Origin: Pavona decussata
Lineage: Eukaryota
Assembly: GCA_977016875.1 (NCBI GenBank)
Contig: CDRNST010000221.1
Span: 62,001-126,000, forward strand
Direction of reading: 5' to 3'
Length of the DNA stretch: 64,000 nucleotides
In this document: piece by piece, positions 28-25,737 of the stretch
Numbering within the stretch: the stretch's first letter is position 1
How the letters are laid out: the number at the start of each line of letters is the position of its first letter
Made by a program: the position numbers and the translations under genes
Notes under the pieces: generated by a model
The model's input: the letters and a program-made list of their open reading frames with translations, nothing else
What the model was told of the DNA's origin: nothing
The model's database searches: none

Positions 28-306
28 TCAAGGCAGTCTTCCTTTCACTCGTTCAACAACCTTCCTCGCTATTTCCAGGGCTTCTCTTGCCTTCTCTGCT
101 TTGTACACGTCATTTGGGATCTGGGGGTAGGACATTCTGTCGGGATAACGCATACGTGTCGAATCCCCCACAAGGCTCTCCAGCTCTGTGGCTAACTGGG
201 TCAATTCAGGGTCATCCAAATTGTTGCAATTCTGAACCAAGTTATGGACATTAGTCTTGCTTGCGTCTACATCATACTGCGCAGCCTTTAATGCCTTCTC
301 TGCTGC
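28..306 (-). CDS. SACS: Sacsin-like last exon: C-terminal half of HEPN domain
   Basis: Acceptor ttttcctag|GCAGCAGAG; reads [27 protein letters not shown]...TRMRYPD...KGRLP*, continuing WACFKCHQ from the previous exon (phase 0). Confidence 0.93.
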   Translation of the reverse strand, partial: AAEKALKAAQYDVDASKTNVHNLVQNCNNLDDPELTQLATELESLVGDSTRMRYPDRMSYPQIPNDVYKAEKAREALEIARKVVERVKGRLP

Positions 307-6300: not shown

Positions 6301-9300
6301 ATCATTCGGGGTCATTTCCACTTGAACGGAGTAACTCTTTCTAAGGTGACCACTTTCGTTTATGGCAGAAATGCTAATATTCTTCACATTGTTTACAAAC
6401 AGGAGAACTTCAAACAACTCCTTCTTCAGTTCCTTCATCATTGCATCTAATTTCGCTTCTGTGACCGGAATTTGTGATATCTTAGATTCTTTAGCCATTT
6501 CCGTGGACTTCAACGGAAACCTGAACATTGTTGCATTCTCTATGGGAAAGTGTTGCTCAAGATAACCACTGAAAACATCGGGGAACTTTTCCTTCAACTT
6601 TTCGATGCCTTTATACCTTCTTCCAGGATTTTCATTAGTTGAAAAGGGAACGTACTTACAATGTGGGTCGAAAACGCATAGAACATCTCCAATTTCCTCA
6701 CCTTTTGAAATGAACGAGGGGACGTCAGTCAAATGGTACACTGCATTGAAGCCAACTCCATACTGGCCGGTTTTGGTTGGATCTTCTCCCTTGCTGCCTT
6801 CCCCAAGGTCGCATATTCCTTGGATATCGGCATTAGTGAATGGCTTGTTGTTGTACACACACAACGCAGGACCCTGCAGCGGTTTCCACCTGTCATCGAA
6901 CACTCTTTCGTCAGGGTGCTTTCTAGGATCTTTAACAAAGCAAATCTCACTTGCTTGGGCATCATCGGCATTTTGTAGAAGTTCTTTCAAAATCTCCTTC
7001 TCGCCTGGGTAGCCTGTTAAAATGCGTTTTAATCGATTTGTGAGTTTCTCTTTCTGCCCGAATGGAAACCCGACGTCATGGTGTTGCAAAGCCCCTTGCC
7101 TACGTGTTTTAACTCCCAGCTTTTCGCAGATAGACCAAGGAATCTTCTCATGGACAAAGTGTTCAGTGGGATCATCAGGTATCCAGGGGCAATCTTTGAA
7201 GCAAAGATCAGCGACATAACGCATTACTCCTCCAGAGTCTGGAAGATAAACATTTCCACACTTCTCTTGCGAGGAATCACCACATGATCCTTCCAAGGTG
7301 TCGCCGAGCTGATGCGCCATATTAACTGCCACTTGTAAAGTTCGCTCGTCAAGCTGGTTGGCACCAAACTCTCTCTGCACTTCTTGGAGACCTGAAATAT
7401 AATCTTTGGCTTCGAACTGCTTCCTTACACCGCCTAATTCAAAGATTTCGTAGTAGCGGGCGGATAAATCTTCTGGAAGTTTGTTAAGGTATGGGGAACA
7501 GTCCACTTTGGCCTCAAAAGCCACATGGTTTGCAGAGAAAAATCTTTTCCCCACAAGAACGAATCTCTTGTTAAGAAGGAATTTCTCAAGACTAGATCCG
7601 GCGTTGGCTGTCTTATTCTGTAAAAATGAATAAGCCGCTGTACAAACCAAGCGTATTTCTTCGAAACCATTACAATCCAGCGTATCCGTCTTGGCAGCGA
7701 TGGCCTGCTCGAGTTGTCTCATGACGTGCTCTTTAGTAACTTCTTTGTCTTCAAGCTTCAACAAGTCCTTCACTTTTTTCTGGATTTCTCGGTCAGCAAG
7801 CGGCTCCGTACAACACACAAGGTACTTTTGCTCCTTTAAGAAAATATCTTTAGCAGCTACCAGAGGCTTTCTTCTTTCCAGATAATCGTCTCCTTTCCAG
7901 GAAAGAGGGAACGACTCTGGTTTTTGCAGGACTGGAAGAAATTGTGCCTCGAGAAGGCGATTCAAAGTGGGCTGTGATGGTTCTTCACTTTGGCTTTTCA
8001 TTTTCCTTTCTATGAATTTGAGTAACGCCTTCACACGCTTAAAGGCCGCTTTACTGTCAACTACATGGAGCCTCTGAACACTCTCGGCTCTCTCAGCAAT
8101 GTCTTCCCAAGGAAGATCGTCTGACATCATTCCCAGCTGCTCAAGCTTTTCAAGTCGCACAGTTCTTAGAAACGTGTCTTCACCACATGGAAACCTGCCA
8201 TCGTTAGGGCCAAAGAGTGAGGCGACCTCTTTTTTAGGATTCACCAATTGGCTTGGACGCTTCGGTCTTTTCCCACCAGGCGATGTTGGAATACAGGCAT
8301 GCTTCTTTATCAGTTCATCAAAATCCTCGCTGTTGTGATCTAAAGCATGCAACACCAAAACATCTCTCAAACCCGATTGAACAATTGAAATGTTCGGGAA
8401 AAACAGCTCACAGAAAAACCGGTTCTTGTCATACGTTTTACTATCCATGAGAGCCCCCAATCCGCAACGTTGAAACGACTCAAACACATCAGCTGGCAGG
8501 TCAATAACCACGTCATTTATTTTGGACAAATGCTGAAAAACTGTAAAGGAGGCTTCTCCTATATCGGAATCGGCGCGGAGATCTGGATGCAGGAAGACCA
8601 CTTGAGTAAAGCTTACCCATTCATTGCCATCAAAGAACAGAGAATGACCTTCAGTTGAAAGTTTCTTGTAGAACGACGTCAAAATAGGAGAGCAGCCTTG
8701 CATTACTTTGGAAGCCCTCGGCCACAATAAATAGAACGCATATGAATCGTCATCGGGAACAAGTGACTTCACATCCTCAAGAAGAGAAATGTAGGCACTT
8801 GAAATAGAATCTTCCATCAGCATGCTGTTCCATTTAACTCCAATGCAAGTCTTGTCATCTTCTAGTTGCTCTTGCAAATGACGTCTGTTGGAAGTTACTG
8901 CAAATGCGCCATTTATGTGAACAGGAAGGCCGCTGTGAATTGGCAGTGGCAAATAACAGAAAATGGTGCCATTGAGATCCAGTCCATCGGTCTTCTTTAC
9001 AATAGGCATGGGCAAAAGTTTGTCTGACGTTCTTGACACTAACTCAACAGCTATTCCCGCCGATGGAAGAAAAGAAGGACCACTTTTCGCAAATTGCATT
9101 GCCTCTCCATTTCCCATTGATGACACAACAAGCCAGGTACCACACTCGTGGCGACGATGCTCGTCTACATTAAAGAATTCCAGACCGGGATCGGTTATAT
9201 TGCACTTGATGTTAACTGCAATCGAAGATTTGGGAAATGCTTTTGGGTTAACCTTATGTGTCGCAGCATCCTTTTTAACCTTGGAACACGCTTGAAGAAA

Positions 9301-12300
9301 GTTGCATTGCTTCAATAAACGTTGCTGGTCAGCATCCAATTTCTTTGCAGTCGCTGGAAGAGTGACAGGGACAGACAATGGTCTTACTATTCCAGTTTGA
9401 GAAAATGACTTATTCACTTTGAATAACAACGTAGGCTGCGTATTTTGGCAAGATGATCTTGGCAATCTGTATATTTCGACACAGATTACGTTTTGTGTGA
9501 ACATAAGCAGCAATTTTGCTCTGTCGAGGAACATTTCCAAGAATTCTTTCATTTCCTTATGACTGTAATAGAGCTCTTTAATCTCACTCCTTGCGGCTTG
9601 TTCTCTCGTTCGTAATGGAAATCGAAATAGCGTTCCTTGAAAGGAGTTATCGCCTTTCTCCAGATTGCAACCAAAGATGCCATCGAATGGCTTGAATTGA
9701 TCACGGAAATCTCGAAGTAGCCTTGTGTTCTTCTTGATGTCAATCCTCATTCCAGGTTTGTTCCTGATTGCTTTACCCAGATATAGGGTGTGCGGATCAA
9801 AAACTACAAAATAGTTTCTGCTAAGGAACATGGGGACATCCGTCAGGTTGTACACGGCATTGAAACCAAGTCCAAACTTTCCAATTTTCTCAGTTTCGCG
9901 TTCTTTTGTACCACCATTCAGTTTTGTAATGTTTACAAAATCTTCATCTCGAAACTCGGCGTCGTTGTAAACCCACAAGGCGGGACCTTGACACTCTTTC
10001 ATTCCTTTGTCAATCAGATAGGTCATGGCAGTTTCGTTGGTTCTTTCATCGTACAAAAATCTGACTTCAGTGGCACCAGCATCGTCTGCATTTTGAATAA
10101 GCTCTTTTGCCACTGCAAATCCATCCGTGTAGTCCTCCAGTAACCTATTAAGCCTATCTGTAAGTTTCTCTTCTTGACCAAACTCTTCTCCTAGTTCTTC
10201 AGGATCCAGTATTCTGTTAGTCAGGGTTCGAACTTTCAATAGTTCAGCAGTGCTGCTAGGAACATCCCGATGGACAAAGAAATATTCCGTGTCTTCATCT
10301 GGTGGTATAAACTCACCTTCACGATACACGCAGTCTTCAAAGGGTTCAAGCTTGACAAAAGCATCGCCTTCCACGTACGTTGGAATGAGAATTTGTTCTT
10401 GAATTTCAGAGGGCAGCCTATCACCATCTTGTGGCTTTACCTCATTCAGGATGTTAATAGATAACCGTAGGTCCCTTTTGACGTCTTCAGGGTGAAATTT
10501 ATCCTCTTTACGATCATACTTCTTTTTCATCAAGTGAAGAACTCGAAGAAAAACGAGTTTATCACATGCTTCTTTCATGCCTAACTTCAAGAATAATCCA
10601 TGGTACTGCTTCATTTCAGAGGGCAGGAAGGAAATGTACGGTGCAAGGTCAAAAGAAGGCTTTTCAGCAAGAATAGTAGATGGAGATGAAAAGCCGTCTC
10701 CATTCCAAATCCAACTTGTATTCGCAATCTCTTTCAAGGCCTCTATGACATCAGTATGATCTGCAGTAAAGAGGAAAGAGTACGTCTCTTCAAGTACCAA
10801 CATATAGCGCCGCTTTTCTTTTTGTTTATAATGCTTGATGACCATCTCAAGATGCTTAACAACGTCTAAAGCTCCAGGTTTCTTGTCCCAGGCAAAATAC
10901 TTGGCTACTTGGCTCGAAGATTCTGCGTCAACAATCGGTTTTACTGTCCCAATGAGGTTTACGTTTTCTTTACTCGTGACTTCTTTGGGCTTGCAGAATT
11001 TGGACTCTTCCCTAGCCTCTCCCCAGAAAAGAAGGCTTTTTGGAAAACTGTCGGGCTTTTTGGTCACTCTGCATACCCATGGGACTTCTCGAAGCAGTTC
11101 TCCCAGTGGTTTTTCATCAACGTTTTGTTGAAATTCCATTGGCTTCCTTTCTAAACACCCCAAAATAGCTTTTGATTTACGCTTTGCGGTCGACATGTCT
11201 GGGATCTGAGGGACCTTTAGGGCACTTAGGTAAAGATCTTGGGCGCTGATTTCGTCCTCGCTTTTCATTCCAAGTTTCTCCAGAACTAAAAGGACTGAAG
11301 GGTCATTATACTGCCTGCCGGTAGGAAAGACATCTTCACCAACGAAGATGTCTTGAAGACGGTCGTTCCTAGGATTAAAGAGGTCAACTGCTCTAACCCG
11401 GCCTTTCTTGGTTGGCACAAATGACAAAGCTTTCATCTTTTCTTCAAAACTGTTACAGCCATCAGCGAGGGGATCGTATCTCTTCATCACAAAATCCATT
11501 AGTCTGTCAATTTCTTCTTCTGAATACCTTCCCTCTTTAACATCTGGAAAAACTCCTGTAAGAAGGAAATTAGACGGTGTCAGGGTTGTGATGTCAAGTA
11601 GACGCACCATTCGTCTGGCATCTTCGTCTTTAGTGTCGATAAAATCTCTTCGGGGAGTCACCGGAAACTCACAGGCATCCTCTGGTGCTGCGTTAAAAAC
11701 CTGTTTCTGTGACACGAACTCCTCTGAGCTTCCCAATTTCTCAAAAAGGGGCAAGCAAAGAAGAAGATCCTTTTCTTGTGCATCGAAATCCGAGGCCTTG
11801 GCAAAGAAATTTCGCAAGGCACGTTTCTCCTCACGGCCTTTTTCTAGCAAGATGGCCGAGAGCATTCCTTTATCCATTTCAGTGGAGGTAATGTGCATGG
11901 CCTGTAGAACACCACGGACAGTTGGTCGCTTGACAAATTTTTCCAGAGCAACAGGATGGCTTCGCACGAAGCTTGGACAACAATCCATGACCATCACTCC
12001 CAGATCCTTCAAAAGGTCGCCCACCCGTTTCTCTAAATGATCCTCATCCAGCACTCTAACGACAATTTTAGAAGATTTCTTTAGCCTTGTTAGGGTAACG
12101 GGATATTGCGTGAAGTCGAGGGGAATCAAAGGGAGGTTTTCAAGCTTAGACAATTCATTTTCCGTCACAAAGTGTTTTCTTAGGTAGTCCCACACGCAGC
12201 TGAGCCATTCTTTTGTTGGATGATTTAACTTTTCGTCACCAGGGAACCATTGAAGTTTATCGCCATTTGACCAGGCAGAAGGTAATGACTCCCAAAGAAG

Positions 12301-15300
12301 AGTAGGTACGTGATCACTATGAAGACGCCGTAATTGAGTACATTCTACAGGAAAAGTAAAAGCTGAACTGAATCTTTGATACACAAGCTTATATTTCGCC
12401 TTCATAGTGTCAATCCTGGAAATAAACAACTATACATAACTCTCAGAGGCAAAGTCAAAGTGAAACCCCAGTTGTATAGCTGTATAGAGGTATAGCTAAT
12501 TTTGTTGCTATTGACCTCGGTATTTTTACTGTTGTCTTATGGTGCAGCAACTTATATAAAGCGCTCACTTCGACAAATCAAAACACATACCTTTCTCTGC
12601 AACATCTTCTAGTTTTCGTAATGTTTCTTCATCGGCGTCTTGGTCCAGAATGCGATGCTTTAGACCAGGAAGAAGCTCTGGCGGATGCTCTGGGGATGTG
12701 ATATAAATGTCACCGTTAGCTGAACGTTCAACAAAAGATACAACTGTTCCATCGGAGACAGGTAAAAGTTCCAATCCAGGAAGTTCAGAAAAGTTATCAT
12801 CTTTGAGAACAAACTTGAGAAGGGAAAACTTTTCCTTTCGTCCTAGGCTCCTGTAGCAAGAAGGAGTGGCCTTGAGAATACAACGCACAAAAGATGGGGT
12901 GATCTCTTTGGCAGTAGTCGTGCAAACGGATTCCAACACATGATTGGGCAGAGTGGCAACGTTTTGACAGGCCTCTAGTAAAACCTTCCGAAGCAACTCC
13001 TTTAGATCATCATTTTCATCAAGTTTGTCAAAGATGGCGTCTTTGAGGTTAATCCATTTCCCTCCATGAGCTTGAGTGTATATGAATCGTCCACTGCGAA
13101 GCAACTCAAATAAGGGTTGTTGAATTCTCTTCCAGGTTTGTTCAATATTGTTGACATCTGGCCACGCTCTGTTTGACACAATAATGCCAGAGTGGTAATT
13201 AGTAGTGACTGATAGGTTTTATCGAGACCGCTATACACACTGATTAAGAGCGGCTGCCGGTAAGAATCGAGAACTGCATTTCAGCGACCCCTTGGTCGAA
13301 TTTCTGATACTTCGCCGGAAGATACCCTTGAATTAACTATTTTCGAAAATCATATTTTAAAGTTCCAAGGTATTTTATTTTTTGAGAAAATTACGAGAGT
13401 TTGAAATGCGGCCTACGTGCGGTATCTTCAGACGAAATATCAGAAATTCGACCAAGTGGTCGCTGAAATGCAGTTCTCGATTCTTACAGGCAGCCGCTCT
13501 TAAAACTTTAACTCTTCGAAAATTTGGCCTGTCGTACGCAGTACATTCTATATTTATCTTCTGTGGTTAGGTCGTCAGCCTATTTCCCTAATTCCTTTTG
13601 ATTCCTATGGGTCGCCACAAAACGCTCAAATTATATGTGGTATTGTTGTATGTTGGTATTGTTGCATGATGTTGAGGTCTCGGGGTCAAAGTCATTAGTC
13701 TAAAGAGAAAGAAGGTGTCCCAGTTTTTTCAATGGAAAAATATCATACCAAGTGTGCCGCACAGGCTAAACCTGTTTTAAACTTACTTGTAAATTGAATC
13801 TGGTGGCACATTTCTCTTAATGGCCTCACATATCAAGGCTGCATATGCATTTGGAACAGCTTCCTCCAGCAGACAGCGGTTCCACAACAAGGACTTGTCA
13901 GTCAGCTTCCCGCGATCCTCTTGATCGGCATTTGGTGTCTTGATGTGACGTCTGTTCTGGCTCAGAGCAAAGAATCCGTTCACATGCACTGGTAAGCCTG
14001 TCATGCTTTTGTTTTGCACTGGCAAAGGAAGAGCGCAAAACACGTGACCTGAAATGTCGGGCGTTTGAGGGTTGATGCCGGATGGTAGCGCCATGGCCAC
14101 GCCAACTGAAGGCAATAAGCTAAGGCTTTCATCTCCCAAGAGCTCTTTAAACTTGACCGAGACCTTACCTCCGTAGCAATAACTTGTAACAAGAAAGGAA
14201 TGCCTTTGCATCTCGCCATTCGTCTCTGTCTCAATTGTGAGCGGGTAGGTTACAGTTACCGGTTCCGTCATGTGTTCAGACTGTTTGACTCGGGCATAGA
14301 ACTCTTCCCTCTTATCTCGAGCTAACTGAAGACTGTCTTCCCCGATATTAACTCGAAAGATTCTTGTAAGTGCGGTTTCTGATTCTTCTCGTACGTAAAG
14401 CTCAATAGACTCAAGTTTTCGCAGAAACAAAAGTACCAGATGAGCGTCAGCAATGAAACTCTCGAACAAACTTTCAACCTTCTCGACGGAATACAACGTC
14501 TGCGACAACTTGGATGGGTTGGCACGAAAGGGAAAACGGAACAATGTCCCGTTGTAATGCCCACGAGCGAACACCTCATCGTCACAGTCAAATATTCCTC
14601 TGTAAGGAAGAAACTGATCGGGTATTTTTTCCATGATGTTTGGGACATCACTTAACCGCCAATCATATCCCGTTCTCCGGTCTTCACCTTCGTTAAAGTG
14701 TTCCTCGTGCGGGTCAATGAACCCGATTCGTGTGTTGCTGAGGATGCTTGGTAGATCTAGAATACGAACAAGAAAACTTGTTGGATGATATGCAGTAATG
14801 GGTGATATATAGGTGGCACTTGTATTCAGCCTAAGAAAACAAGGACACGAATTTGTTCAAATCCGCTGCACGTGTGAAATACTTCCCCCTTTTGACGCAA
14901 AAATAAATGCAACAGGTTTGAAAAATGTAACATGCAGTCGCAACAGACCATTTTACAGTTTTGTACTAAGTGTTACCTTTGGGTGACAGCGAGACTGGAC
15001 CTGTCTTTGTATTGATGCAAACCTCACTCGCTTTTCATATGTAAACTATGTTTGTTATGCCAACTAGTCTGCATTTAAACAAGACATGGTTTACATATGA
15101 AACGCCAGTGAATTCTGTGTCAAAGCAAGTGTAGCTACCGCAGGAAACCATGAGAGTCACGGAATTTGTTTATATTGCTTTCGTTTTATCAAGTTGTTAT
15201 TTGTTTAAGAAAAGCCGTTTTTTTTATTTTAGGAATCGGCCTATGTAAGTGTAACGGTTTTCCGTAAGTAATGTTTTTAGTCTTTCCTAGAAAACGCGTA

Positions 15301-18300
15301 ATTTAAAAGCGCACGTTCTTGCCGATCACGACAGCGCAAATCAAGAAAAGTCAAAAGACTGTGTTCGTTTTCGAATCGCTGGAGCTACAGCAAGCTCTAA
15401 ACTAGCCTCGCTTCCACTCAGAGGCCAGATCACCAAGCCCATAACTTTAAAATTGACCACTGGCGAGTAAACAAATTTTCTCCCCATTTTTTTTTTCGAG
15501 GAATACTGGCTAGATTTTATGTTTAAAACTGGAAAATCCTCATCTAAGCTTGTTTTCCGAGTTCTTTTCTCGCTACACCAAGTGTCTGTCAAGGCATTTG
15601 AAAGTTAATACTGATGACGTCACAAATGATACAATTTGCGTGCTACCCAGACTGCCAAACCATGAACGAAAGAGTGTTAAATTAGTCGTGATGTATTTAC
15701 CTGTCATGTGAAACACGGATTTAAAGCCCAAGCCAAATCGACCCACTTTCATGGGATCCTTAACTTTAATACTGTCACTCAGCATTCTGATGCCCTTCCA
15801 GTCATCTTTAGAAAACTGGGCGTTGTTGTAGGCATAAAGTGCCGGACCCTGTTGAAGAATAAAATAAAGAAGTAAATCAACAAAATTATTCAAATAAGTA
15901 AATTTTTTGAGATGCTCTTGGTCATAAAAGCCAGCCCCTAAAAACGAACGACGTTTCCACTAATCATCAGTTACTTTCAAGTTCGAGTTATTGTTTAGAA
16001 ATTTTACAGATACATTACACACCATCGCAAAAGATGGCAATTTTTAACGATCCTGGAAGACATCAAAAATGTGACGCTGCGGTGTAGAAGTGTGAAGTTT
16101 CTTTGTCAATTTACAAGTATGTATGTATCGGCATTTGAAACGTGACATAACTTTAATGAATGTAGGTTCAAAAGCAACGGCAGATAATTTTTTATAGTTA
16201 GATTTTATCTTAAGGGGTCCACTTGGTAAATAATTAAAATTGATCCCATCCTTTCAAATAGTATTGAATCCTTTAGGACGGTATTTGGGAAAACCAAACT
16301 GAAACCACAACGTGAACGCAAATCGATCCCGTATTGCTAGAAAAATGGAAAATTTTCAGGAGAGTTAAATCGAGATAGAGTTGAGACGACAGTACTGGCA
16401 TTCACTTATCTTTAGCCCTCTCGGGATATGGTGTGGTGTGTGAACCCAGTAAAGATATGGATAAACAATTAGCACGAACTTCCTTACGTCAAATCCATTC
16501 ATTCGGTTGAAAGTAAAATAAAAACCGCACCTGAAACTGTATGAGGCCCTCACTGTACAGTTTTTGTGTTCCGTAGCTGTGCTTGTCGTAAAGAAATTTA
16601 ACTTGAGTTGCTTCTGCGTCTTCCGCATTCTGTATAATCTCCTAAAACAGCGGACAGACTCATTTATGAGAACTTAAACTATATAGAGACCGTACATGAA
16701 GAGACGTAGTATTTTATAACAACCATAATATGGTGGACGCGTTTGCCCAGATTTCAATTTTCCCGTTTTCAACTCATTTAAATTAAAATGCTTAAATTAT
16801 GAACCATTCATAAATGTGGTAGTGTGTTATCCAGTGATTCAATGTTTAATAAACAACTATTATGCACTTTTCCCCTTTTTGGGTTGCATTTATTTTTAGG
16901 TTGCTTTTGGTGTCCAAAGAAAACAAAATCCCACTCTAAGACAAGTATTTTTACCTTGAGTATCTGTCCATCATCCGGGTACTCATCCAGGATTTTCCTC
17001 AACTGCTGGAGGAGCGTTGGTTGAATCAAATTAAATCCGTCGTCATCACCATCAACTTCCACTACGGAAACAGAACACGATTGATAAATAAGAAACAACA
17101 ACAACAAAAGAACAAACGAACAAACAAACAAACAAACAAGAAAACGGTTGCATTTCCTCCTGACCCACGTCTTCCTTAAGGATATTACCCTTGGATAAAC
17201 AGCCTCTCAGCTACATATATAGAAACAAGATCTAGACCAACTGTAGACAAATCTGGAAAAAATTGGGTCCGACAAAGTGCTAAAACGTCAGCTCGTTAAT
17301 GGACATCAGTTAACCTTGCCAGCTCAGTAGACAAAACCAAACACATTTTTTACTCCCCACCAACGCAGCACCACAGTTTCCTTAAAAACTGACCCCTTTA
17401 ATCCATTTGAAAACAAAAAAGGAAAGAAAACAATTGCGTATAAACTGCCAAAACTTAAGATCTTCTGTTGTCCTGACTGAGACGTTCAAAGCATGCCTTA
17501 GCCTCAGTCATTCAAATACGAGAGCCTATGTAGGACAACTGGACAACTGAGCTTTCAAAAGACCACTGTGCTCATCCTTTCGTTCTTGCTTATCAATGAA
17601 AAATTGCATTTGCTTTTGATACACATATAGAAGTAAGTAAACTTTATTTAGACAGGGTGGCCCAATCAGCTACGGGGCTGTTATCCTGAGGGGCCCTGTA
17701 TACACCTAAAATAATTATTCTTATGGTATGAGAAAAAAATATACAATATATATGACTCAAACACTTTTAAATTAAAATATCATAGGATAGAAAAAATAAA
17801 TAAAAACATTTGCACACTAAGAAAAAAATCTATGCAAAATCGTGTCTCATCATTAGTCGCTTAAAAGCCTCCAAGGACGCTGCCCGTTTGTATGTTTCAG
17901 GTAACGAATTAAATAAAATCGCTCCGGAGTATCTAAAAGTTCTCTTCCCGAGGCTAAGTTTGGGTCTTGAAGGATGAATGTCTTCACGCCGACGTGTATT
18001 GTAACTATGGAAACTGTGGTTTCTATTAAATTAGAAGAGTACAAACTGGGAAATGCATTTTCAAATGCCAACAATTCAGCGATAAATTCTTTAAAAAATA
18101 TAAAGAAAAGTACTTTGTTCAATATTTTATCTGTATTGAATCAATGTTAGTATAGGCGTTATTGTATTGATGAATGTCATTCTTAGAAAAAGGTTGGCCG
18201 ACATCACCTTTTTGGCCGTTCCATTTATTTATTCAGTAGTCCAGGTTTGGTCAGGCCAATTGTAAAACTCACGGTCAAATTTTCTTCGGTTCATCAAAAT

Positions 18301-18643
18301 GTCTCTACAAAAGTTTATCTAAACTATCTAGTATATTGCTGAAATAAGACTTCCTCAATCCGTATAACGACCTCACAACAGGGACAACACATATTTTATT
18401 TCAAATCAACAGGTTTAGCTTCATATGCAGTTGACGGAGGCTGCGAGCAGTGAAGTTGGGCACACAGCAGTTATTGTAATGAACTACACAACCCTTATGT
18501 ACCTTTTGCATGAGGCCACAGAGTGTGCCGTATTCATGGATATTGCAAAATTAAACGTCTTGTGTCAGCTATATCTAAAGCATCTAGTCATGCATCGGTG
18601 TTTGGCCCGTATTCCTGTATTATAAGGGAATTGTTTACTTACT
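28..18643 (-). CDS. SACS: Sacsin-like gene, whole spliced CDS span (8 coding exons, ~4,436 aa; SRR1-SRR2-SRR3-J domain-HEPN)
   Basis: Exons joined at GT-AG sites with matching phases: 18643, 16955-17061, 16531-16641, 15701-15848, 13787-14756, 12591-13168, 1228-12344, 28-306; total 13,311 nt, divisible by 3, ending in TGA. Three HSP90-like repeats ([12 protein letters not shown] / [12 protein letters not shown] / [12 protein letters not shown], each followed by GPAL.xYN and a G.FG.GF-type glycine loop), then J domain and HEPN. The 5'-most exon is inferred; orthology versus paralogy to vertebrate SACS is untested. Confidence 0.9.
1228..12344 (-). CDS. SACS: Sacsin-like giant exon (11,117 nt): SRR2, SRR3, J domain, start of HEPN
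   Basis: Part of uninterrupted ORF 1171..12429; acceptor ttttcctgtag|AATGT (phase 1), donor CACCAG|gtaaaa; motifs [49 protein letters not shown]. Confidence 0.96.
12591..13168 (-). CDS. SACS: Sacsin-like internal exon (SRR1 C-terminal part)
   Basis: aaacag|AGCGTGG ... GAGAAAG|gtatgt; reads (K)[12 protein letters not shown]...LEDVAEK; phases 2 and 1 match the neighbouring exons. Confidence 0.92.
13248..13499. mobile_element. MITE with long TIRs and TTAA target duplication (Kolobok-like), in sacsin intron
   Basis: ttaa|GAGCGGCTGCC..AAGAATCGAGAACTGCATTTCAGCGACC ... GGTCGCTGAAATGCAGTTCTCGATTCTT..GGCAGCCGCTC|ttaa. Confidence 0.85.
13787..14756 (-). CDS. SACS: Sacsin-like internal exon (SRR1 core)
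   Basis: ttctag|ATCTACCA ... TTTACAA|gtaagt; [44 protein letters not shown]. Confidence 0.93.
15701..15848 (-). CDS. SACS: Sacsin-like internal exon (SRR1 ATPase-like motifs)
   Basis: caacag|GGTCCG ... ATGACAG|gtaaat; [12 protein letters not shown]...[16 protein letters not shown]. Confidence 0.93.
16531..16641 (-). CDS. SACS: Sacsin-like internal exon (111 nt; its reading frame is not in the ORF track)
   Basis: ttttag|GAGATT ... TTTCAG|gtgcgg; [37 protein letters not shown], phase 0-0. Confidence 0.92.
16955..17061 (-). CDS. SACS: Sacsin-like exon starting SRR1
   Basis: ttccgtag|TGGAAGTT ... CTCAAG|gtaaaa; [36 protein letters not shown]; begins in phase 1 with TG. Confidence 0.9.
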
Positions 18644-18690
18644 GGTAATCACAGATAGCCAGAGCCTTTAAGTTGTTCGGTAATCATGAC
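18643..18690 (-). other. Candidate 48-nt 5'UTR exon of the sacsin-like gene supplying the A of a split ATG; contains a 12-codon uORF
   Basis: tttccttaccag|GTCATG...GATTACCA|gtaagt; splicing to TGGAAG yields ACCATGG. Confidence 0.6.
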
Positions 18691-19674
18691 CTGGTAAGGA
18701 AAGAAAGACTTTTGTTACATTACGTACGAAATCAGCCATTTGTTCTAAGAATAGATAATTATACCTTTTAGGACATGTCCTAATCTGTTGCACTACAGCG
18801 AGCGAAAACTATAATTACTCTTCAATTCCCATTACCCGCGAGACAGCATATTATATTAAGCAGTACAGAGAGCTTTCAAAGCTTCGCGATTAAATCTGTT
18901 GGGAAAAGGGAATGAGCATCTCCCGACGGCTTTACTTAACGGTGGTGTTGCAATGGGCAACGTTACAGAAATAAAATACCGATGGTCATTACTACCGACT
19001 TAATTCAGTGCTTAGTGTGTCAAATACTGGATATCAGATTCTAGCATGATCTAGCGATTGTGATGAACCATCACTACGGTCTCATGATCAGGCAATGATA
19101 TAAAAATTAAATCAATCCACAGTACAAAAACGAACTTCCACAGACATGAACATTCATATAGAAAAGCATCCGTCAATTTCCTTAATCTTTAATCCGGCGG
19201 GCGTTTTTAAACTTGAGCTCACCTGTCGACCGGCAAACTATGACAAGCAAAATCAGCACGGCGGGCTTATTATAGGTGAGAAATCGTGTTTGAAAAAATC
19301 GGGTGTGAACACCAAAGAGTAATGTATAACGATGATTATTTTTTAAGGAAGTAAGTATTTGTGCTGTGGAGTTTAATATTTTGAACGAGTCGAGATGTTC
19401 GAATCATAACCGTATTGTCATGCCCATGAAACCCGGATCCCTCCATAGCTTCGAAATCGGCCGTGAACATAACTCCATAAACATACATCTAGCAAGTTTT
19501 TGAAATTCTTACTGATGCTTGCTGCTCGGTTGCAAAGAACTTCTCGAAATTATTTAAACAACAAAAACCCCGTGGGAGATGATCATTGCTAGGCATGTTT
19601 AATATATTATTAGAGAGTACGACACCAGCAAGAAAGCCTTCGTCTGATGTTAGTCAACACAAGCTAGCAGTTGT

Positions 19675-19751
19675 TTCTCGGAATTTCACGGCAATTTAAC
19701 AAGCTCCCTTTTCTCGGAATCGTCAGCTGAAAATACTGTGAACGTCACGTG
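19675..19751. promoter_or_regulatory. Candidate promoter core A: two GAS (STAT) palindromes plus CRE/E-box composite
   Basis: TTCTCGGAA 19675-83 and 19711-19; ACGTCACGTG 19742-51; further pair TTCTTGGAA 20668-76 and TTCGTGGAA 20690-98. Confidence 0.5.
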
Positions 19752-21214
19752 AACAGATTGCTAGGAATATCGACACGCTTCATCTCACATCCGTTGTTAT
19801 CTGCATATCGAAAATCTCACAATGAAGGTTTAAAGTTAAGCGGAATGGATTTTAAATTCTATTTAAATGTTTTGACGGAGTGTTAATGTGCGTTTCACGA
19901 CTTTTTTCTCACGTTATCGTTAATATACTTCTGTTAGATGAGCTTGGAGAAACAACTTTTTTATCGTTGGAAAGCTAAACACATTTTGTGCGGCTCCTCC
20001 CAACCACGTTAAAACTAAATGAAACATGTTATATAAGAAAATATAAGTTTATAAAGAGCGTTTTACTATGTTAATTCAAAACTAAATTCGCCTAACTTGA
20101 CCGTATTTCCGTTCTCTCATTATTAGTTTTCCCATCAATTCAAAACTTCCTCACTATCTTGTTCAGTTCGACCCTATAACACAAGGTTTACCTTGAAAGT
20201 GAGGCTAACAAACCTTTTCATATAAAAACTAGTTTTGTCTGCATATGAATGAAAACTAATTTTCATAATAAAAACCATGCATTTCGCCTGGCTTTCACAA
20301 TGAGGTTCAAAGCAACTCGTAAATGGCCCATTAAGGCCAAACTATTCAGTGTTAGCTAACGCTTCAGCATTAAATCTTTTATAACTGAAGAGAGTTTTGA
20401 TGGGGGATAATTCTCTCTACAACTTCACCTTGAATAATACAGGCGTACAAATTTCACCAAGAAAGCTTACAAAACATGCAACGAAGATATATTGTAAGCA
20501 TGAGGGCGACAAAACTAACTACTGCTACAAAATGCTTCGTCATATCTGCCGTATTACCGTTCTCTCGTTATTAGTTTCCCCATCAATTCAAAAGCCAAAA
20601 ACTCAATGAAAATGAAGCAGTTGCTATCAACTCGTTGCTCCTTGATGGAAATTCAACACGCTACAGTTTCTTGGAACTTGTTATGTGCTTTCGTGGAAAA
20701 AATGACAGCTGAATAAACACTGGCTGCATGACATCAAATTCTCACAATTGAACCTTCACCAGCTTACTGATAACAAATTATTGTTTCTTCTCAAGGGTTA
20801 CACGAAAGACAGTTTTGTTAATTCTTAAGACTATGTAACAAAATCTTAGGAAAAACCAGACTTAGGATCAGTTATTAAAAGATAGTTTAGACGGTGTTTA
20901 ACAAAACCACGTTCTATGCCTTTTTCCATTTTGCTTCCAATCACATCTAAACATAATGGCTGCTGCTGACGGTAGAAGACTAGAAAACTATTTATGTAAT
21001 TAAAATAAAACACTTATAAACAGATTTGGAGGCCCACTGATTGCCTTAAGCCGCGGCCTAAATAAGACTTTGTTTAAATGACTAACCTTTAGTGAATTAC
21101 TGGCTCAAGATCTTGGACAAGTTTAAAGTGAATGTTGAATTGTGAGGAACGAAATCCGACTAGATACTTGTAAGCTTTATGTGTTCTTGTGGCTAAGACG
21201 TATATATGCGTCAT

Positions 21215-23060
21215 ATATTGCAAAATTAATGGTCTTGTATGGATATATATACAGCATGTAGTCACACATAGCGCTTAGCTCACCCTTGCATTATAAGGAT
21301 ATTGTTACTCACTCGCTCACAGGAAGTCAGAGTCCTCTCAAAGTGTTTGGCAACCAAGCCATAGCAAGAAAAAAATTTATGATGTAAGATATGATATTCA
21401 TTATTCAACCATTTGTTCAGATCTATTGCACTTTCTTAGCTCTAGTAAACTAATAACAGGTTGTCTAAAATCATTACTGTTTTAAATTTTCCAAAGAGTT
21501 GGCCTCGACACAGCCATTTTATCCAAAGCCTCGCGAGTAAACGTGTTGGAAAAAATGAACGTTTCTTGAACTGAGAAAGCCTTATCTGGTGGCTATAGAT
21601 TTCAATGCCGTGTACAAACCATGAACGTTCGAATTCAGGTAAGGTTCGGCCATGATTTATCGGCTGCGACCTATAGGAAATGCTACCATTAAATAAGTTC
21701 ACAGCATGACTCTAACCTTCAGAAATACTAAACATTCTGGACAACTGAAAAGGATCTGTGAATTTCAATTCCTTCAGCATTTTCTGAAAAAAGGCAAACA
21801 ATTCCCGGCCGGTGAATCGTAACGGACAAAATCACGAGGGGCGAATGGCACTTAACCGTCAAAACTAATGTCCGTCTTCCAATTTTCCATCGCCATCAAC
21901 GGGAACATCTCTAATCGGCCGCAAACATACACCTTGCAAAATTTCTTATCCCTCATCGCAATAGCTGCGAAGAGTAGAACGCAGTTCCTGATTTCTCGAA
22001 ACCTTTATAGCAACGAAGAAACTGTGGGAGGTGTTCGTTGCTGGGCAAGTTTCCAAGTTTTAATACACCGGCATAGTTCATCAAATTTTGTTGAGAAACA
22101 TTTCGACGGAGCGCTAGCAACTGAAAATATGACTGTATGGCCGAAGCTCTCGAACCAAAGACAACAAAAATGATTGAACTGACTCACCCAAAGCCAGGAA
22201 CATGCAAGAACTCTTCGTCTGATGCCAGTCAACACAAGCTTGCCGGTTTTTCCCGGAATTTTGCGGCAATTTAATAAGCTTTCTTTTCGCGGAATCGTCA
22301 GGTGAACAAACCGTGGACGTCACGTGAACAGATTCAGTCGAAATACTACACGCCTTTCATCCGGTGTAAATGTTGAAATATAATTACCATCCTTTGAAGA
22401 AGTCTTTTTTTCTTACGATTAATGTATTTCTGTTGTTGAAAACGGAAGAGATTAGACGAAACATGATTTATAAGAAAATATTAAGTTATAAGACGCATTC
22501 AACTCCAATTTTTTTATTCGATCCACATTCGTTTAAATTTAGTATGAAATCCTTTAAAATGGTGTGTAATACCTCGAGAATATCTCTGCCAATAGCGGCT
22601 TTGAAAGTGAGGCCAACAAACCTTTTCATATAAGGACTAATTTTGTCTGCACATGAATGAAAACTAATTTTCATAATAAAAAACCATGCATCTAGCCTGG
22701 CTTTCACAATGAGGTTCAAAGCAAAACTATTCAGGGTAAACAAAATCTTCGTCACATGTCCCGCATTTGCGTGCAACATTTTGTCATTTTCTCATTATTG
22801 CTCTCTCCTGGTAGCTCCGTGTATCCAAAACTTCTTGCTATCTTTTACGACAGCACTGATAAATGATTTTACTCTTATTTTCAACAGCTAAATGACTTAC
22901 ATTACAACTATCAACATGGAAAAGAAGTAGATCACATTACTCTTTGTTTTCTGATGAAAATTCAGCAGGCTACAGTTTTCTTGGAATTTTTCCGATGCTT
23001 TCTTGGAAAAGTGGCAGCTGAATAAACACAAATTCCGTAATAGAACCTTGTTCTCCAGCG
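21215..23060. repeat. Upstream module copy B
   Basis: ATTGCAAAATTAA block matches 18542; core 22200-22360 matches 19625-19790; shares the embedded MITE fragment (22600-22725 vs 20190-20330) and the 22960-23030 vs 20645-20720 block. Confidence 0.8.
22250..22326. promoter_or_regulatory. Candidate promoter core B: two GAS palindromes plus CRE/E-box composite
   Basis: TTCCCGGAA 22250-58, TTCGCGGAA 22286-94, GACGTCACGTG 22316-26; further pair TTCTTGGAA 22978-86 and 23000-08. Confidence 0.5.
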
Positions 23061-23979
23061 TATGCAAAACAAACTATTTGTTCCTCTCACCCCGCAAAAC
23101 ACAACCTTAAAAAGCAAAAAGACTGCATAGCATTCTCTCGTCCTATTCTAGGACACACAGGTTGCATATTCAGTCTTGTTTGTATCCGTGATACGCAAAT
23201 TTCTTTCAACGGTAAAAAAACAAATCCGCCATTTTGAAATTTGACCACTGAGTAAACCGCACGAAAGGCCCGAGTTTGTGTAATGGGGAATAAGAAAGCT
23301 GCATGGGCAACGCTGCAGGAATAAAGTGCCAATGAATTTATAGCTGATTTGGACTACTTGAAACTCAGAGCACCTTAAGATTAGTAAACTTGCCAAGTAT
23401 AAAAATGATATGTCCGGAAGCGAGCGAAGATATAGTTCTGCAAAATCGCCAAATTTTACAGACGTTTATACCATACAAGCGTCTGTAAAATCTCGTGCCT
23501 TTGCGGATGCATGCTCTCATTAGTTTTAAACATGTCACTCTCAAACTTGGAAAACTTATTAATTTTAAGGCGTTCTTTCCAGCGGTGTCGGTGGATTTTT
23601 GCTAACTGGTCCAAGTCAAAACCATGGAAGGGTCTAAAAATTTGAACATTTCCCGAAGAAAGCCGCATCTAACGGCGATGTTAAAACAAGGCGACGTTGC
23701 AGTAATAAAATGCCACGATAATTATACCACCGAACCAACTGGTGATAAATTTCCCCAAGATTTTGGAGATTGGCAGATGAAATTTTCTCACATTCACACA
23801 GAGAAATTGTAACTATGAAAGAACTTCAAAAGTTTGGAATAGTGAACGAGGCATTCAGGTTGTACATTTTGTCCTTATCCTGAATCGATAGAACAAACAT
23901 TTTAAGGTGACTTCATACATTGTCGTATCCAGACAAAATCATGACCAAATCACCGACGTTCGTATCTTCTGATTATAAC

Positions 23980-25185
23980 TGAGAAACAAGTTTATACCTT
24001 GAACAATGTCAATTATCAGGTCCCCGGCAGTCAAACGCAGAATATACTTGTTTCTTATATATTTAAAGCAGTATATTTACACTTGCAGAAGTTTTAAAAG
24101 CTAAAGGCCCGTGAAATGCCAGTGTACATGTTACTCAGTTAGTAAACGTGCCATCTAGTAACAGACACAACTGAAACGTCGATTTCACTGATACAATGTA
24201 TGATTTCCCCGCTGTAATGGACCTTGAAGATTGGCTCAGGATAAGGCAATGATGAATCAAATTCTCCCATTAAATAAACAGACAACGCAAAAAGTAACTT
24301 TTAGAGATATTCATATAGAAAAGGATCCTGTAAACTTGAGCTCACCTGCTCGACAAACCGGTAAACTATGACAACAATTTAAATCAACATGGCGGGCTTA
24401 TTATAAGCGAGAAATCGTGTTTGAAAAACTCATCTCTGGTGTGTACACTAAAGGGAAATATATAAAAATGATTACTTTTGTGGAAGTAAGTATTTTTGCT
24501 ATGGGTTTTAATATTTTGAACGAGTACTGCTGTTCGAATCGCGTGTCCATTAACATAGCTTTGAAAATCGGCCGTAAAAATCACTCCATAAACACACACC
24601 CGGCATGGTTTGCTAGTAGTTATATCCCTTATTGCGCGGTTATGAAGAACTTACAATTAATTTCTCGGAATTATTTAATCAACGAAGAAAATGCAACCGT
24701 GAGAGATGTTCGTTGGTTCGCACTACTATTACCGCAGTAAGCGTAACCGGCATTTCTCACGCAATTTTGCCGCTGCCTGCGAAAAACAATTGAACGAACC
24801 GTTGAGCAGTTGATCATCTCGAATAAATACCAATAAAACCAACAAATAACTTACCAAAAACTTCACAGACAAGAAAATTTCCCCCTGATGTAAGTCAACG
24901 TAAATTTGCAGACCCTTCTAGAACCTTCAAGGTAAAGTTCTTCCAGTGATTTCCCGGAATCGTCAGCTGAACAAACCGTAGACGTCACGTGATCAGGTTT
25001 CTCGGAATATCGACGCACCTCATCGCACATCCGGTGTTATATGCATATCGAAAACCTTACAATGAAGGTTTAAAGTTAAGGTTGAGCCGAAAAGATTTAT
25101 ATTCAATTTAAATCTTTCACGACTTTTATCTCAGGATTTTCGTACTTCTGTTAGAAAAATTGTTTAAAGTTGGAAAGCTACGTAA
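23980..25185. repeat. Upstream module copy C
   Basis: ATTCATATAGAAAAG..AAACTTGAGCTCACCTG..GGCGGGCTTATTATA matches 19150-19290; core 24880-25080 matches 19640-19840. Confidence 0.8.
24951..25007. promoter_or_regulatory. Candidate promoter core C: GAS - CRE/E-box - GAS
   Basis: TTCCCGGAA 24951-59, GACGTCACGTG 24981-91, TTCTCGGAA 24999-25007; also TTCTCGGAA 24662-70. Confidence 0.5.
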
Positions 25186-25737
25186 CACAGCTAGATATAA
25201 ATAAATGCGTTAGATCATATGCAAAACAATCTTTAAAACCTTATCGCAAAATGCAAAGACATTAATTCACGCAAAATAAAAGTACCTACTATAAGAAGAT
25301 TGCTTGTTTTGCAATCGAAAATTTGCGTTACCCTAAATTAAAAGAGAAGGGGACTAGAACGTCTCGGTCGCAAAATCGGGATTTAGATTGGCTGGAAAGC
25401 CGGATATACTACTATATTATGCAATATTGCATGGCAGCTTAGATTATTTTTTGACAAATTTTAAGTATGAAGTAAATGAAGTATGACAGAAATGTTGTCC
25501 CTTTGTTATCTTAATTTAATAGACTTAAAATAGTTTGATGCCTGAGTGATTTTTCCTGTTTCGTTATCTGCATACGAAAGAACTTCACTGCAAGTGATGG
25601 TAAGACAATAAAGCACTAACAAATTTACAATTTACAATTTCAGGCTGTCCTGTGTTGTTAAATAAACAGAATTTTTCAGGTCAAAAACATTTCAATTTTC
25701 AGGTGCCGGGGGTTAGCTTAGTTCGCTTTCTGCAAAC

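What the first reader, a model, noticed from the sequence alone, without database searches (positions are those of the whole stretch)
18535..25185. Triplicated upstream module packed with STAT-type GAS sites in front of an intact sacsin-like gene
Seen: three diverged copies of a module directly 5' of the gene carry 11 perfect TTCN3GAA palindromes (19675, 19711, 20668, 20690, 22250, 22286, 22978, 23000, 24662, 24951, 24999). Pair spacing is identical in copies A and B (36 nt and 22 nt). The TTC/GAA arms are kept while the central N3 and the flanks vary. An ACGTCACGTG (CRE half-site overlapping an E-box) is invariant in all three copies. Copy C has lost the first core site (TTCTAGAA) but has two sites that A and B lack, which looks like binding-site turnover. 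Known: TTCN3GAA is the STAT-binding GAS consensus, and paired GAS sites support cooperative STAT binding. Inference: an array of tandem STAT-responsive promoters or enhancers makes this giant HSP90-like/J/HEPN protein an inducible immune or stress effector in an invertebrate that would lack canonical interferons. Caveat: the copies are not independent observations.
Basis: partly seen in the sequence, partly recalled or inferred. Interest (0 to 1): 0.8.

Follow-up and report, generated by a model that had tools for sequence, protein, structure and literature searches.

The report
Duplicated STAT-site promoter cassettes of coral sacsin
Upstream of a giant sacsin-like stress/immune gene in a stony coral lie three diverged copies of a promoter-like cassette whose STAT-type TTCN3GAA sites and an E-box have been kept while the DNA around them drifted, which gives a testable but still unproven idea of how this gene family is switched on.

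Summary
All 11 TTCN3GAA sites are at the stated coordinates, plus a twelfth at 18743, against about 3.4 expected. The 36-nt and 22-nt spacings are real.

The module is not a transposon. Its core has six copies in the 602-Mb genome, three here and three upstream of the neighbouring sacsin paralog. The scan had already noted that second locus (s1-497898).

The gene runs on the minus strand (34-17062), so the array lies 5' of it.

- half-site arms differ at 1 of 60 positions, flanks at 86 of 562 (P=0.0014)
- GTCACGTGA is unchanged in 8 of 9 copies
- central triplets vary freely, mostly as CpG decay

Conserved minus-strand splice donors and a relative's transcript point to alternative promoter/leader-exon cassettes.

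The genome has a complete STAT gene with its own dense TTCN3GAA cluster upstream, and a probable JAK exon. Similar clusters lie upstream of other sacsin paralogs and of an Oculina sacsin-like gene.

Corrections:
- the CRE half-site is not conserved
- site 24999 in copy C is ancestral, not a gain
- copy C's "lost" site is a perfect heat-shock element

STAT binding and inducibility are untested. Triple GAS clusters also occur in dispersed repeats.

Verdict: partly supported; a plausible new instance of a known kind.

The parts
34..17062 (-). Sacsin-like gene, coding part. Seven coding exons: 17061-16955, about 16641-16450, 15851-15702, 14763-13786, 13170-12589, 12342-1225, 279-34.
   Evidence: tblastn of the relative's full-length protein P0004. 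One uninterrupted 3752-aa ORF at 1171-12429. Pfam SACS domain E=2e-162, plus a further SACS hit in the 13783-14634 exon. A J-like stretch with HPE (DnaJ E=0.038), and HEPN split over the last two exons.
16955..17061 (-). First coding exon. It begins with TG after the acceptor ...ccgtag|, so the A of the start codon must come from the upstream leader exon.
   Evidence: Sequence. The BLAST match of the relative's transcript L015 starts exactly at 17061, and that transcript reads ...CCTGA|TGGAAGTT.
18643..18690 (-). Leader mini-exon 1a, 48 nt: acceptor ...ccttaccag|G, donor ...ACCA|GTAAGT. It supplies the A of ATG.
   Evidence: Alignment of the three paralogous copies keeps A|GTRAGT in all three. 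The motif GTCATGATTACC matches nt 34-45 of the relative's 5'UTR.
21216..21375 (-). Paralogous leader segment 1b. The donor ...GCGA|GTGAGT puts the last exon base, A, at 21312. The acceptor AG is not kept.
19638..19782 (.). Core A. TTCN3GAA at 19675-19683 and 19711-19719. Site 3 is decayed to TTGCTAGGAA. E-box GTCACGTGA at 19744-19752.
19208..19588 (.). Proximal part of cassette A, shared with C at 70% identity. It holds TTCTCGAA (N2) at 19541 and a minus-strand CAG|GTGAGC donor-like site at about 19222.
20629..20721 (.). Distal element X, with paired TTCN3GAA at 20668 and 20690 (22-nt spacing) followed by CAGCTG.
   Evidence: Only 3 copies in the genome. Both sites are intact in all 5 copies, including the related genome.
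22204..22334 (.). Core B. TTCN3GAA at 22250-22258 and 22286-22294. Site 3 is altered to N4 spacing (22333). E-box GTCACGTGA at 22319-22327.
22176..22193 (-). Minus-strand splice donor CTTTGG|GTGAGT downstream of core B. The exon would end at 22188.
   Evidence: Kept in B, B1', B2'. Its exon end resembles the ...GGTTTTGGAT end of the first 33 nt of the relative's 5'UTR. This is an inference.
22939..23029 (.). Distal element X', with paired TTCN3GAA at 22978 and 23000.
24895..25117 (.). Core C. Site 1 is replaced by TTCTAGAACCTTC (24916-24928), a perfect three-unit HSE. TTCN3GAA at 24951-24959 and 24999-25007. E-box GTCACGTGA at 24984-24992.
24850..24859 (-). Minus-strand splice donor TTTTG|GTAAG downstream of core C. 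The exon would end at 24855.
   Evidence: Kept in C, C' and Co.
24331..24715 (.). Proximal part of cassette C, with TTCTCGGAA at 24662-24670.
20193..20335 (.). High-copy palindromic MITE embedded between core A and X. A second copy lies at 22601-22724. It is not part of the regulatory module.
   Evidence: More than 1600 first-look candidates genome-wide, matching on both strands at the same places.

Best explanation
The interval holds tandemly duplicated promoter/leader-exon cassettes of a stony-coral sacsin-like gene that is transcribed leftwards on the minus strand.

Read in the gene's direction, each cassette has:
- a distal pair of TTCN3GAA palindromes (X)
- a 130-bp proximal core with up to three TTTCYNGGAAT palindromes and a GTCACGTGA E-box
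- a splice donor 60-90 nt further on
- in units 1 and 2, a 48-nt leader mini-exon that ends in the A completing the split start codon A|TG

The palindromes and the E-box are under purifying selection. The palindromes are most likely bound by the coral's STAT, whose DNA-binding exons resemble STAT5/STAT92E. The E-box is most likely bound by a bHLH-ZIP factor of the MITF/TFE/USF type. This would give inducible transcription from alternative starts.

Shown: the anatomy, the copy number, the conservation pattern, the presence of a STAT gene, and the recurrence of such clusters at other sacsin genes.

Inferred: which factor binds, where transcription starts, and that the gene is inducible.
For: Position and copy number
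- The gene is on the minus strand and its first coding exon lacks the A of ATG.
- A relative's transcript shows the same A|TG junction and a leader homologous to mini-exon 1a.
- The core has only 6 copies in 602 Mb, all upstream of two neighbouring sacsin paralogs. X has only 3 copies.

Conservation
- Nine-copy alignment, including a related genome: arms 1/60 against flanks 86/562, Fisher P=0.0014; E-box 0/45.
- Fitch changes per column are 0.56 in the arms against 1.11 elsewhere, permutation P=0.017.
- Donors GG|GTGAGT or TG|GTAAGT are kept in B, B1', B2', C, C' and Co.

The candidate factor
- A STAT gene lies on contig C8 with collinear exons for STAT_int, STAT_alpha, STAT_bind (two exons), STAT_linker and SH2.
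- Its own 5' 10 kb has 15 TTCN3GAA against 4.05 +/- 2.25 in shuffles.
- There is a JAK-type FERM_F1 exon, E=3.5e-5.

Recurrence elsewhere
- The 10 kb upstream of other sacsin first exons is enriched: g2 has 11, C143 has 15, Oculina has 15, against about 5 expected. g4 has 4 sites in 135 bp.
- g4, C143 and Oculina share an alignable three-site module.

Literature
- TTCnnnGAA is the STAT92E 3n site, and clusters of conserved sites mark STAT enhancers (PMC2877871).
- Sacsin is listed among the antiviral effectors of the oyster IFN-like pathways, which that paper links to JAK/STAT (PMC7064767).
- Sacsin-like expression in Acropora responds to poly(I:C), as cited in PMC8626496.
Against: - There are no expression, TSS, chromatin or binding data for this species.
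- The first 33 nt of the relative's 5'UTR could not be matched to any cassette.
- Copy A has lost the donor region. Copy Co in the related genome has lost the E-box and site 3, so not every copy is constrained.
- The copies are few and related (B was compared with three kin), so the P values overstate independence.
- The deep alignment was made on regions chosen for having clusters.
- Part of the contrast between centre and arms is CpG decay.
- Genome-wide there are 68 places with three TTCYNRGAA sites close together. Many lie in two dispersed repeat families and in tandem repeats, so such clusters are not specific to immune promoters.
- Four of nine sacsin upstream regions show no enrichment.
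- Nematostella STAT knockdown did not reduce cGAMP-induced genes (PMC8713801).
Confidence: 0.5

Rival explanations
1. The palindromes are real, constrained cis-elements of these promoters, but a factor other than STAT binds them. That could be another dimeric factor recognising TTC/GAA half-sites, or HSF for the N2 variants. STAT signalling would then play no part.
For: The arms are conserved, but nothing identifies the protein. Copy C and C' carry a perfect HSE, TTCTAGAACCTTC, at the place of site 1, and A and B have TTCTCGAA where C has TTCTCGGAA. Coral literature treats sacsin as a heat-stress co-chaperone (PMC8626496; bioRxiv 10.64898/2026.04.01.714264). nvSTAT knockdown had no effect on cGAMP-induced genes (PMC8713801).
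Against: Three-nucleotide spacing is the STAT hallmark and does not fit HSF, which needs two. The extended consensus TTTCYNGGAAT fits STAT5/STAT92E-type sites. The HSE is not kept in the related genome, where Co has N4 spacing. The STAT gene itself carries the same kind of cluster.
Confidence: 0.2
2. The region is neutrally drifting duplicated intergenic or intronic DNA. The motif excess is one ancestral set of sites multiplied by duplication, and the apparent constraint comes from few, related copies, ascertainment and CpG effects.
For: The copies are not independent. C and C' are 91% identical, like neighbouring non-module DNA at 89-93%. Co shows decay. Triple clusters also occur in repeats.
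Against: In copies not used for discovery the arms are 1/60 against 86/562 for the flanks, and the E-box is 0/45. All 10 X sites are intact across 5 copies. Conserved donors and the leader exon give the region a gene-linked anatomy. Non-alignable sacsin upstream regions in the same genome and in Oculina also carry clusters.
Confidence: 0.15
3. Some cassettes, above all the outermost copy C at 8 kb from the first coding exon, act as enhancers or as a promoter for the divergent plus-strand ZP-domain gene to the right, not as sacsin promoters.
For: ZP-C exons lie on the plus strand at 28640-28852 and 29276-29515. The ZP gene is duplicated together with the unit. The sites are palindromic and so have no orientation. 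Core A aligns slightly better in plus orientation to the g4 module (score 30 against a null maximum of 24).
Against: Minus-strand donors are conserved downstream of B and C. Units 1 and 2 are followed by leader exons that complete the sacsin start codon. The 5' end of the ZP gene was not located.
Confidence: 0.1
4. The module is a fragment of a transposable element that happens to carry GAS-like sites.
For: A high-copy MITE sits inside each unit. Dispersed repeat families with three TTCCGGGAA-type sites exist in this genome.
Against: The core has 6 copies and X has 3, all at the two sacsin loci. The MITE is separate from the sites. The repeat families do not align to the core.
Confidence: 0.03

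Closest known systems
GAS elements in STAT target promoters and enhancers (vertebrate ISG and SOCS promoters; Drosophila STAT92E 3n sites, PMC2877871)
   Same: TTCN3GAA palindromes with the preferred Y at position 4 and G/A at position 6. They are clustered and paired, with conserved half-sites and a free centre. They sit upstream of a gene family linked to antiviral and stress responses. The STAT gene itself is flanked by such sites.
   Different: There is no binding or induction evidence. No interferon is known in cnidarians. The sites lie in tandemly duplicated cassettes. One copy has swapped a GAS for an HSE.
Alternative promoter / first-exon arrays (UGT1A or clustered-protocadherin type; recalled from general knowledge)
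   Same: Several upstream cassettes, each with its own regulatory core and splice donor, could join the same downstream exon.
   Different: These first exons are non-coding leaders and supply at most the A of the ATG. Only two or three cassettes exist, and their use is not shown.
Heat-shock elements bound by HSF1
   Same: Copy C and C' contain a perfect nTTCnnGAAnnTTCn. Sacsin is regarded as a heat-stress co-chaperone in corals.
   Different: All other sites have 3-nt spacing, which HSF does not use. The HSE is absent from the related genome's copy.
CLEAR / M-box type E-boxes (GTCACGTGAC) of MITF/TFE and USF factors (recalled from general knowledge)
   Same: GTCACGTGA is invariant in 8 of 9 copies, with the flanking T and A typical of this class.
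   Different: There is one copy per core. The factor is unknown, and the element is absent from the g4, C143 and Oculina modules.

Membership tests
STAT-binding GAS element | 9-bp palindrome TTCN3GAA | tested here: met
   12 exact sites in 18535-25185. The extended consensus is TTTCYNGGAAT.
STAT-binding GAS element | Half-sites conserved beyond the flanks in paralogous and orthologous copies | tested here: met
   Arms 1/60 against flanks 86/562, P=0.0014. Fitch permutation P=0.017. Caveat: the copies are few and related.
STAT-binding GAS element | A STAT with DNA-binding and SH2 domains is encoded in the genome | tested here: met
   Collinear exon hits on G000:C8 for STAT_int, STAT_alpha, STAT_bind (two exons), STAT_linker (E=2e-9) and SH2. 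The exons were searched singly and not joined.
STAT-binding GAS element | STAT occupies the sites (EMSA, ChIP or DAP-seq) | not testable with these tools
   No binding data are available.
STAT-binding GAS element | Transcription depends on STAT activation | not testable with these tools
   No expression data for this species. The Nematostella STAT knockdown was negative for cGAMP-induced genes (PMC8713801).
Promoter / first-exon cassette | Lies upstream of the gene on the gene's strand and is followed by a splice donor | tested here: met
   The gene is on the minus strand. Donors are kept in B, B1', B2', C, C' and Co. Leader exons end in A|GTRAGT.
Promoter / first-exon cassette | Transcript evidence for a start and for the splice junctions | tested here: inconclusive
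   A relative's transcript supports the split ATG and the leader mini-exon, but its first 33 nt match no cassette.
Transposable-element fragment | Many dispersed copies unrelated to gene starts | tested here: not met
   The core has 6 copies and X has 3, all at two sacsin loci. Only the embedded 140-bp MITE is high-copy.
Heat-shock element | At least three alternating nGAAn units with 2-nt spacing, conserved | tested here: inconclusive
   Perfect in C (24916-24928) and in C'. Absent from A, B and Co.
Sacsin-like protein | Repeated SACS/HSP90-like regions, a J domain and a C-terminal HEPN domain | tested here: met
   SACS E=2e-162, plus an extra SACS hit in the 13783-14634 exon. HEPN halves E about 3e-4 each, and the J-like region is weak (E=0.038, HPE instead of HPD). 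Full-length coral relatives of 4429-4455 aa.

The most novel reading that the evidence does not exclude
An old three-site GAS promoter module, shared between paralogs of this coral and Oculina, puts the expanded coral sacsin family under a STAT pathway that works without interferon. It would belong to a wider STAT regulon, since the scan also noted GAS-dense promoters at ZNFX1 and BTB genes. In this gene, duplicated cassettes have diverged, so that one promoter carries a heat-shock element and the others carry GAS sites. The gene would then integrate immune and thermal signals, at a gene family repeatedly flagged in coral heat-tolerance studies.
Probability: 0.25. Interest if true: 0.7.

Novelty: new member of a known kind. 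Interest (0 to 1): 0.45.

Why it matters
Sacsin-like genes are repeatedly named as candidates for heat and bleaching tolerance in corals, and as antiviral effectors in molluscs. How they are regulated is unknown.

Conserved STAT-type sites in defined cassettes give precise, mutable targets for reporter, EMSA, ATAC and CRISPR work. They would also be one of the first concrete cis-regulatory links between a cnidarian STAT and an effector gene.

The GAS-to-HSE swap in one cassette suggests a simple way for duplicated promoters to split immune and heat inputs.

All of this is still prediction.

Tried and rejected
- Transposon origin: rejected. The core has 6 copies and X has 3. Only the embedded MITE is high-copy.
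- STAT_bind search at the default threshold found nothing. A relaxed search and exon-by-exon Pfam scans then showed the gene.
- Jak1_Phl search: blank. FERM_F1 gave one exon just under the cut-off, so I call JAK probable, not shown.
- The relative's 5'UTR (L015 1-85) was compared with this window and with six other sacsin upstream regions. Only the coding junction and the leader mini-exon are recognisable; the first 33 nt match nowhere.
- The look-up of the Acropora muricata model P0016 was not on record. The Oculina model P0034 was used instead.
- Orientation of the core relative to the g4/C143/Oculina module: inconclusive.
- HSE as a general explanation: rejected. Only C and C' have one.
- The CRE half-site reading: rejected. 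ACGT is not kept in 5 of 9 copies.
- Genome-wide triple-cluster scan: 68 places, many in repeats. The tool's reversed-pattern control (1261) is dominated by other repeats and is not informative.
- The ZNFX1/BTB lead from the scan (s1-488917) was not tested.
All exon work was done by reference, exon by exon.
Full report
**Where we are.** The window is G000:C221:62001-126000 of a 602-Mb genome. The closest named proteins to its largest ORF are sacsin-like proteins of Acropora, Montipora, Oculina and Porites, so the organism is a stony coral. I did not determine the species.

**The gene.**
- The sacsin-like gene lies on the minus strand.
- It has one 3752-aa exon (1171-12429) with a Pfam SACS hit at E=2e-162, and a further SACS hit in the 13783-14634 exon.
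- tblastn with P0004, a relative's full-length 4429-aa protein, places seven coding exons between 17062 and 34.
- The C-terminus has a weak J-like stretch (HPE in place of HPD, DnaJ E=0.038). HEPN is split over the last two exons.
- The gene looks intact.
- I searched exons one at a time by reference. I built no joined model.

**The observation.**
- The window has 54 sites against 33 +/- 5 in shuffles. The 6.65-kb interval has 12 against about 3.4.
- Spacings of 36 and 22 nt are exact.
- Self-comparison shows two fuller units and a partial third:
  - Unit 1 (18534-20721): leader segment 1a, cassette A, a MITE, distal element X.
  - Unit 2 (21140-23291): leader segment 1b, cassette B, the same MITE, X'.
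  - Cassette C (24159-25478).

**Not a transposon, but a duplicated locus.**
- The 211-bp core has six copies in the whole genome. Three are here and three lie 78 kb to the right.
- X has three copies.
- The right-hand copies lie upstream of the next sacsin paralog, also on the minus strand. The whole gene-plus-upstream unit is duplicated.
- DNA identity between the two units rises from about 65% in the 3' coding part to about 90% in the upstream region and beyond. The C/C' similarity alone therefore says nothing about constraint.
- The stretch 20193-20335 is different. It is a palindromic MITE with more than 1600 first-look candidates genome-wide.

**Gene-linked anatomy.**
- The first coding exon starts with TG directly after an acceptor.
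- A Logan RNA contig from a related coral (L015, encoding P0004) reads ...CCTGA|TGGAAGTT. Its match to the window begins exactly at 17061. The start codon is therefore split A|TG, as another first-stage note (s1-480846) proposed.
- The A can come from a 48-nt mini-exon (18690-18643) with a good acceptor and an A|GTAAGT donor. Its paralogs at 21312 and in the second locus keep A|GTGAGT.
- The mini-exon is recognisably homologous to nt 34-85 of the relative's 5'UTR (GTCATGATYACC...).
- Further upstream, 60-90 nt gene-downstream of the site clusters, B, B1', B2', C, C' and Co keep GG|GTGAGT or TG|GTAAGT donors.
- In A that stretch is deleted. A and C share another donor-like CAG|GTGAGC.
- This is the layout of alternative promoter/leader-exon cassettes.
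- I could not match the first 33 nt of the relative's UTR to any cassette, so the starts themselves remain inferred.

**Are the motifs conserved beyond the flanks?**
- I walked along a contig of a related genome (ENA ERZ26692669, 88-94% identical) and recovered the orthologous cassettes Ao, Bo and Co. They are separated there by insertions that include an LTR retrotransposon.
- Site by site in the nine-copy core alignment:

| Element | Intact in | Altered or lost in |
|---|---|---|
| Site 1 | A, Ao, B, Bo, B1', B2' | C, C', Co |
| Site 2 | eight of nine copies | B2' |
| Site 3 | Ao, B1', B2', C, C' | A, B, Bo, Co |
| GTCACGTGA | eight of nine copies | Co |

| Columns | Mismatches |
|---|---|
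| Arms | 1 of 60 |
| Other columns | 86 of 562 |
| Central triplets | 10 of 30 |
| E-box | 0 of 45 |

  Arms against other columns gives P=0.0014.
- A parsimony count gives 0.56 changes per arm column against 1.11 elsewhere (P=0.017).
- The central changes are mostly CCG or TCG turning into CTG, CCA or TCA, which is CpG decay.
- Both X sites are intact in all five copies.
- Caveats: the copies are few and share branches, and Co has lost the E-box and site 3 by deletion.

**Corrections to the reading.**
- The CRE half-site is not conserved: B1', B2' and Bo have AAGTCACGTG and Ao has ATGTCACGTG. The conserved unit is the GTCACGTGA E-box.
- Site 24999 in C is ancestral and was lost in A, B and Bo. 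Only 24662 is specific to the C lineage.
- The 'lost' TTCTAGAA in C is part of TTCTAGAACCTTC, a perfect three-unit heat-shock element. C' shares it, but Co does not.

**Is STAT plausible?**
- On contig C8 there are collinear plus-strand exons hitting STAT_int, STAT_alpha, STAT_bind (two exons), STAT_linker and SH2.
- The 10 kb around the gene's 5' end carries 15 TTCN3GAA against 4.05 +/- 2.25. Seven of them lie within 1 kb upstream of the STAT_int exon. Self-regulation is usual for this pathway; that point is from general knowledge.
- One exon on C60 hits the JAK-type FERM_F1 domain at E=3.5e-5, just below the cut-off.
- TTCnnnGAA is the 3n site of Drosophila STAT92E, and clusters of conserved sites have been used to find STAT enhancers (PMC2877871).

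**Recurrence at other sacsin genes.**
- The first coding exon has eight copies in the genome, five of them in a tandem array on this contig.
- TTCN3GAA counts in the 10 kb upstream:

| Upstream region | Observed | Expected from shuffles |
|---|---|---|
| this gene | 14 | 4.5 |
| g2 | 11 | 5.0 |
| C143 | 15 | 4.6 |
| Oculina patagonica sacsin-like gene | 15 | 5.3 |

- g4 has four sites in 135 bp followed by a donor. g0, g3, g5 and C18 are not enriched.
- The g4, C143 and two Oculina clusters align as one three-site module with spacings of about 38 and 19 nt.
- The very low P value is inflated, because I chose those regions for their clusters.

**Limits.**
- Genome-wide there are 68 places with three TTCYNRGAA sites close together. 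Many belong to two dispersed repeat families or to tandem repeats, so such clusters are not specific to immune promoters.
- In Nematostella, knockdown of the single STAT did not reduce genes induced by 2'3'-cGAMP (PMC8713801).
- On the supporting side, sacsin is listed among the antiviral effectors of the oyster IFN-like pathways, which that paper ties to JAK/STAT (PMC7064767). Acropora sacsin-like expression is reported to respond to poly(I:C) and to be linked to stress (PMC8626496).

**Verdict.**
- The promoter-cassette reading is well supported by anatomy. Selective retention of the palindromes and the E-box is supported statistically.
- STAT as the binding factor and inducibility are reasonable but untested. 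I put the whole explanation at about 0.5.
- It is a predicted new instance of a known kind of element, of moderate interest because of the role ascribed to sacsin in coral stress tolerance.

Noticed in passing
window 18643 / 17061 (minus strand): The start codon is split by an intron (A|TG). The A comes from a 48-nt leader mini-exon. Paralogous donors at 21312 and in the second locus also end in A.
   Followed up: yes
window 24916-24928: TTCTAGAACCTTC is a perfect three-unit heat-shock element, exactly where copies A and B have their first GAS site. C' shares it; the related genome's copy does not.
   Followed up: partly
L029 766-1555 (G000:C8:3608766-3609555): The coral's STAT gene has seven TTCN3GAA sites within 1 kb upstream of its STAT_int exon, and 15 in 10 kb against about 4 expected. 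This suggests autoregulation.
   Followed up: partly
window 20193-20335, 22601-22724, 50288-50447: A palindromic MITE of about 140 bp with more than 1600 first-look candidates in the genome. It was inserted before the unit 1 / unit 2 duplication and before the gene duplication.
   Followed up: partly
window 1-31500 against window-equivalent 68900-115650: A 47-kb duplication unit (sacsin gene, upstream array and ZP gene) shows an identity gradient, from about 65% in the 3' coding region to about 90% upstream. This points to gene conversion of the 5' part or fast divergence of the coding 3' part.
   Followed up: no
window 28640-28852 and 29276-29515 (+): Exons of a ZP-domain (ZP-C) gene lie on the plus strand, divergent from the sacsin gene. 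Its 5' end was not located, and it could share cassette C.
   Followed up: no
G000:C221 (first coding exons at 25441, 78955, 157457, 215065, 262447, 309295), plus C18 and C143: There are at least eight sacsin-like genes, five of them in a same-strand tandem array on this contig at 47-78 kb spacing.
   Followed up: partly
G000, e.g. C11:35145-35202, C51:2511311-2511367, C123:5170145-5170201: A dispersed repeat family carries three TTCCGGGAA sites in 57 bp. A second family carries TTCTAGGAA...TTCCCGGAA...TTCTTGGAA. These are possible mobile carriers of GAS-type sites.
   Followed up: no
L027 1-3257 and L028 7310-11446 (related genome): An LTR retrotransposon (RT, RNase H, integrase) and other insertions separate the cassettes in the related coral. 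Its copy Co has lost the E-box and site 3.
   Followed up: partly
window 46484-46559: Three TTCN3GAA sites lie within 76 bp, outside the sacsin upstream region. I did not examine them.
   Followed up: no
window 1171-2100 (minus): The J-like region reads RWHPEKN (HPE instead of the HPD needed for Hsp70 stimulation). The relative P0004 reads RWNPINN.
   Followed up: no
L031 1375-1707 (G000:C60, minus): One exon has a JAK-type FERM_F1 hit (E=3.5e-5, 24.2 bits against a cut-off of 26.1), so a JAK-like kinase is probably present.
   Followed up: partly
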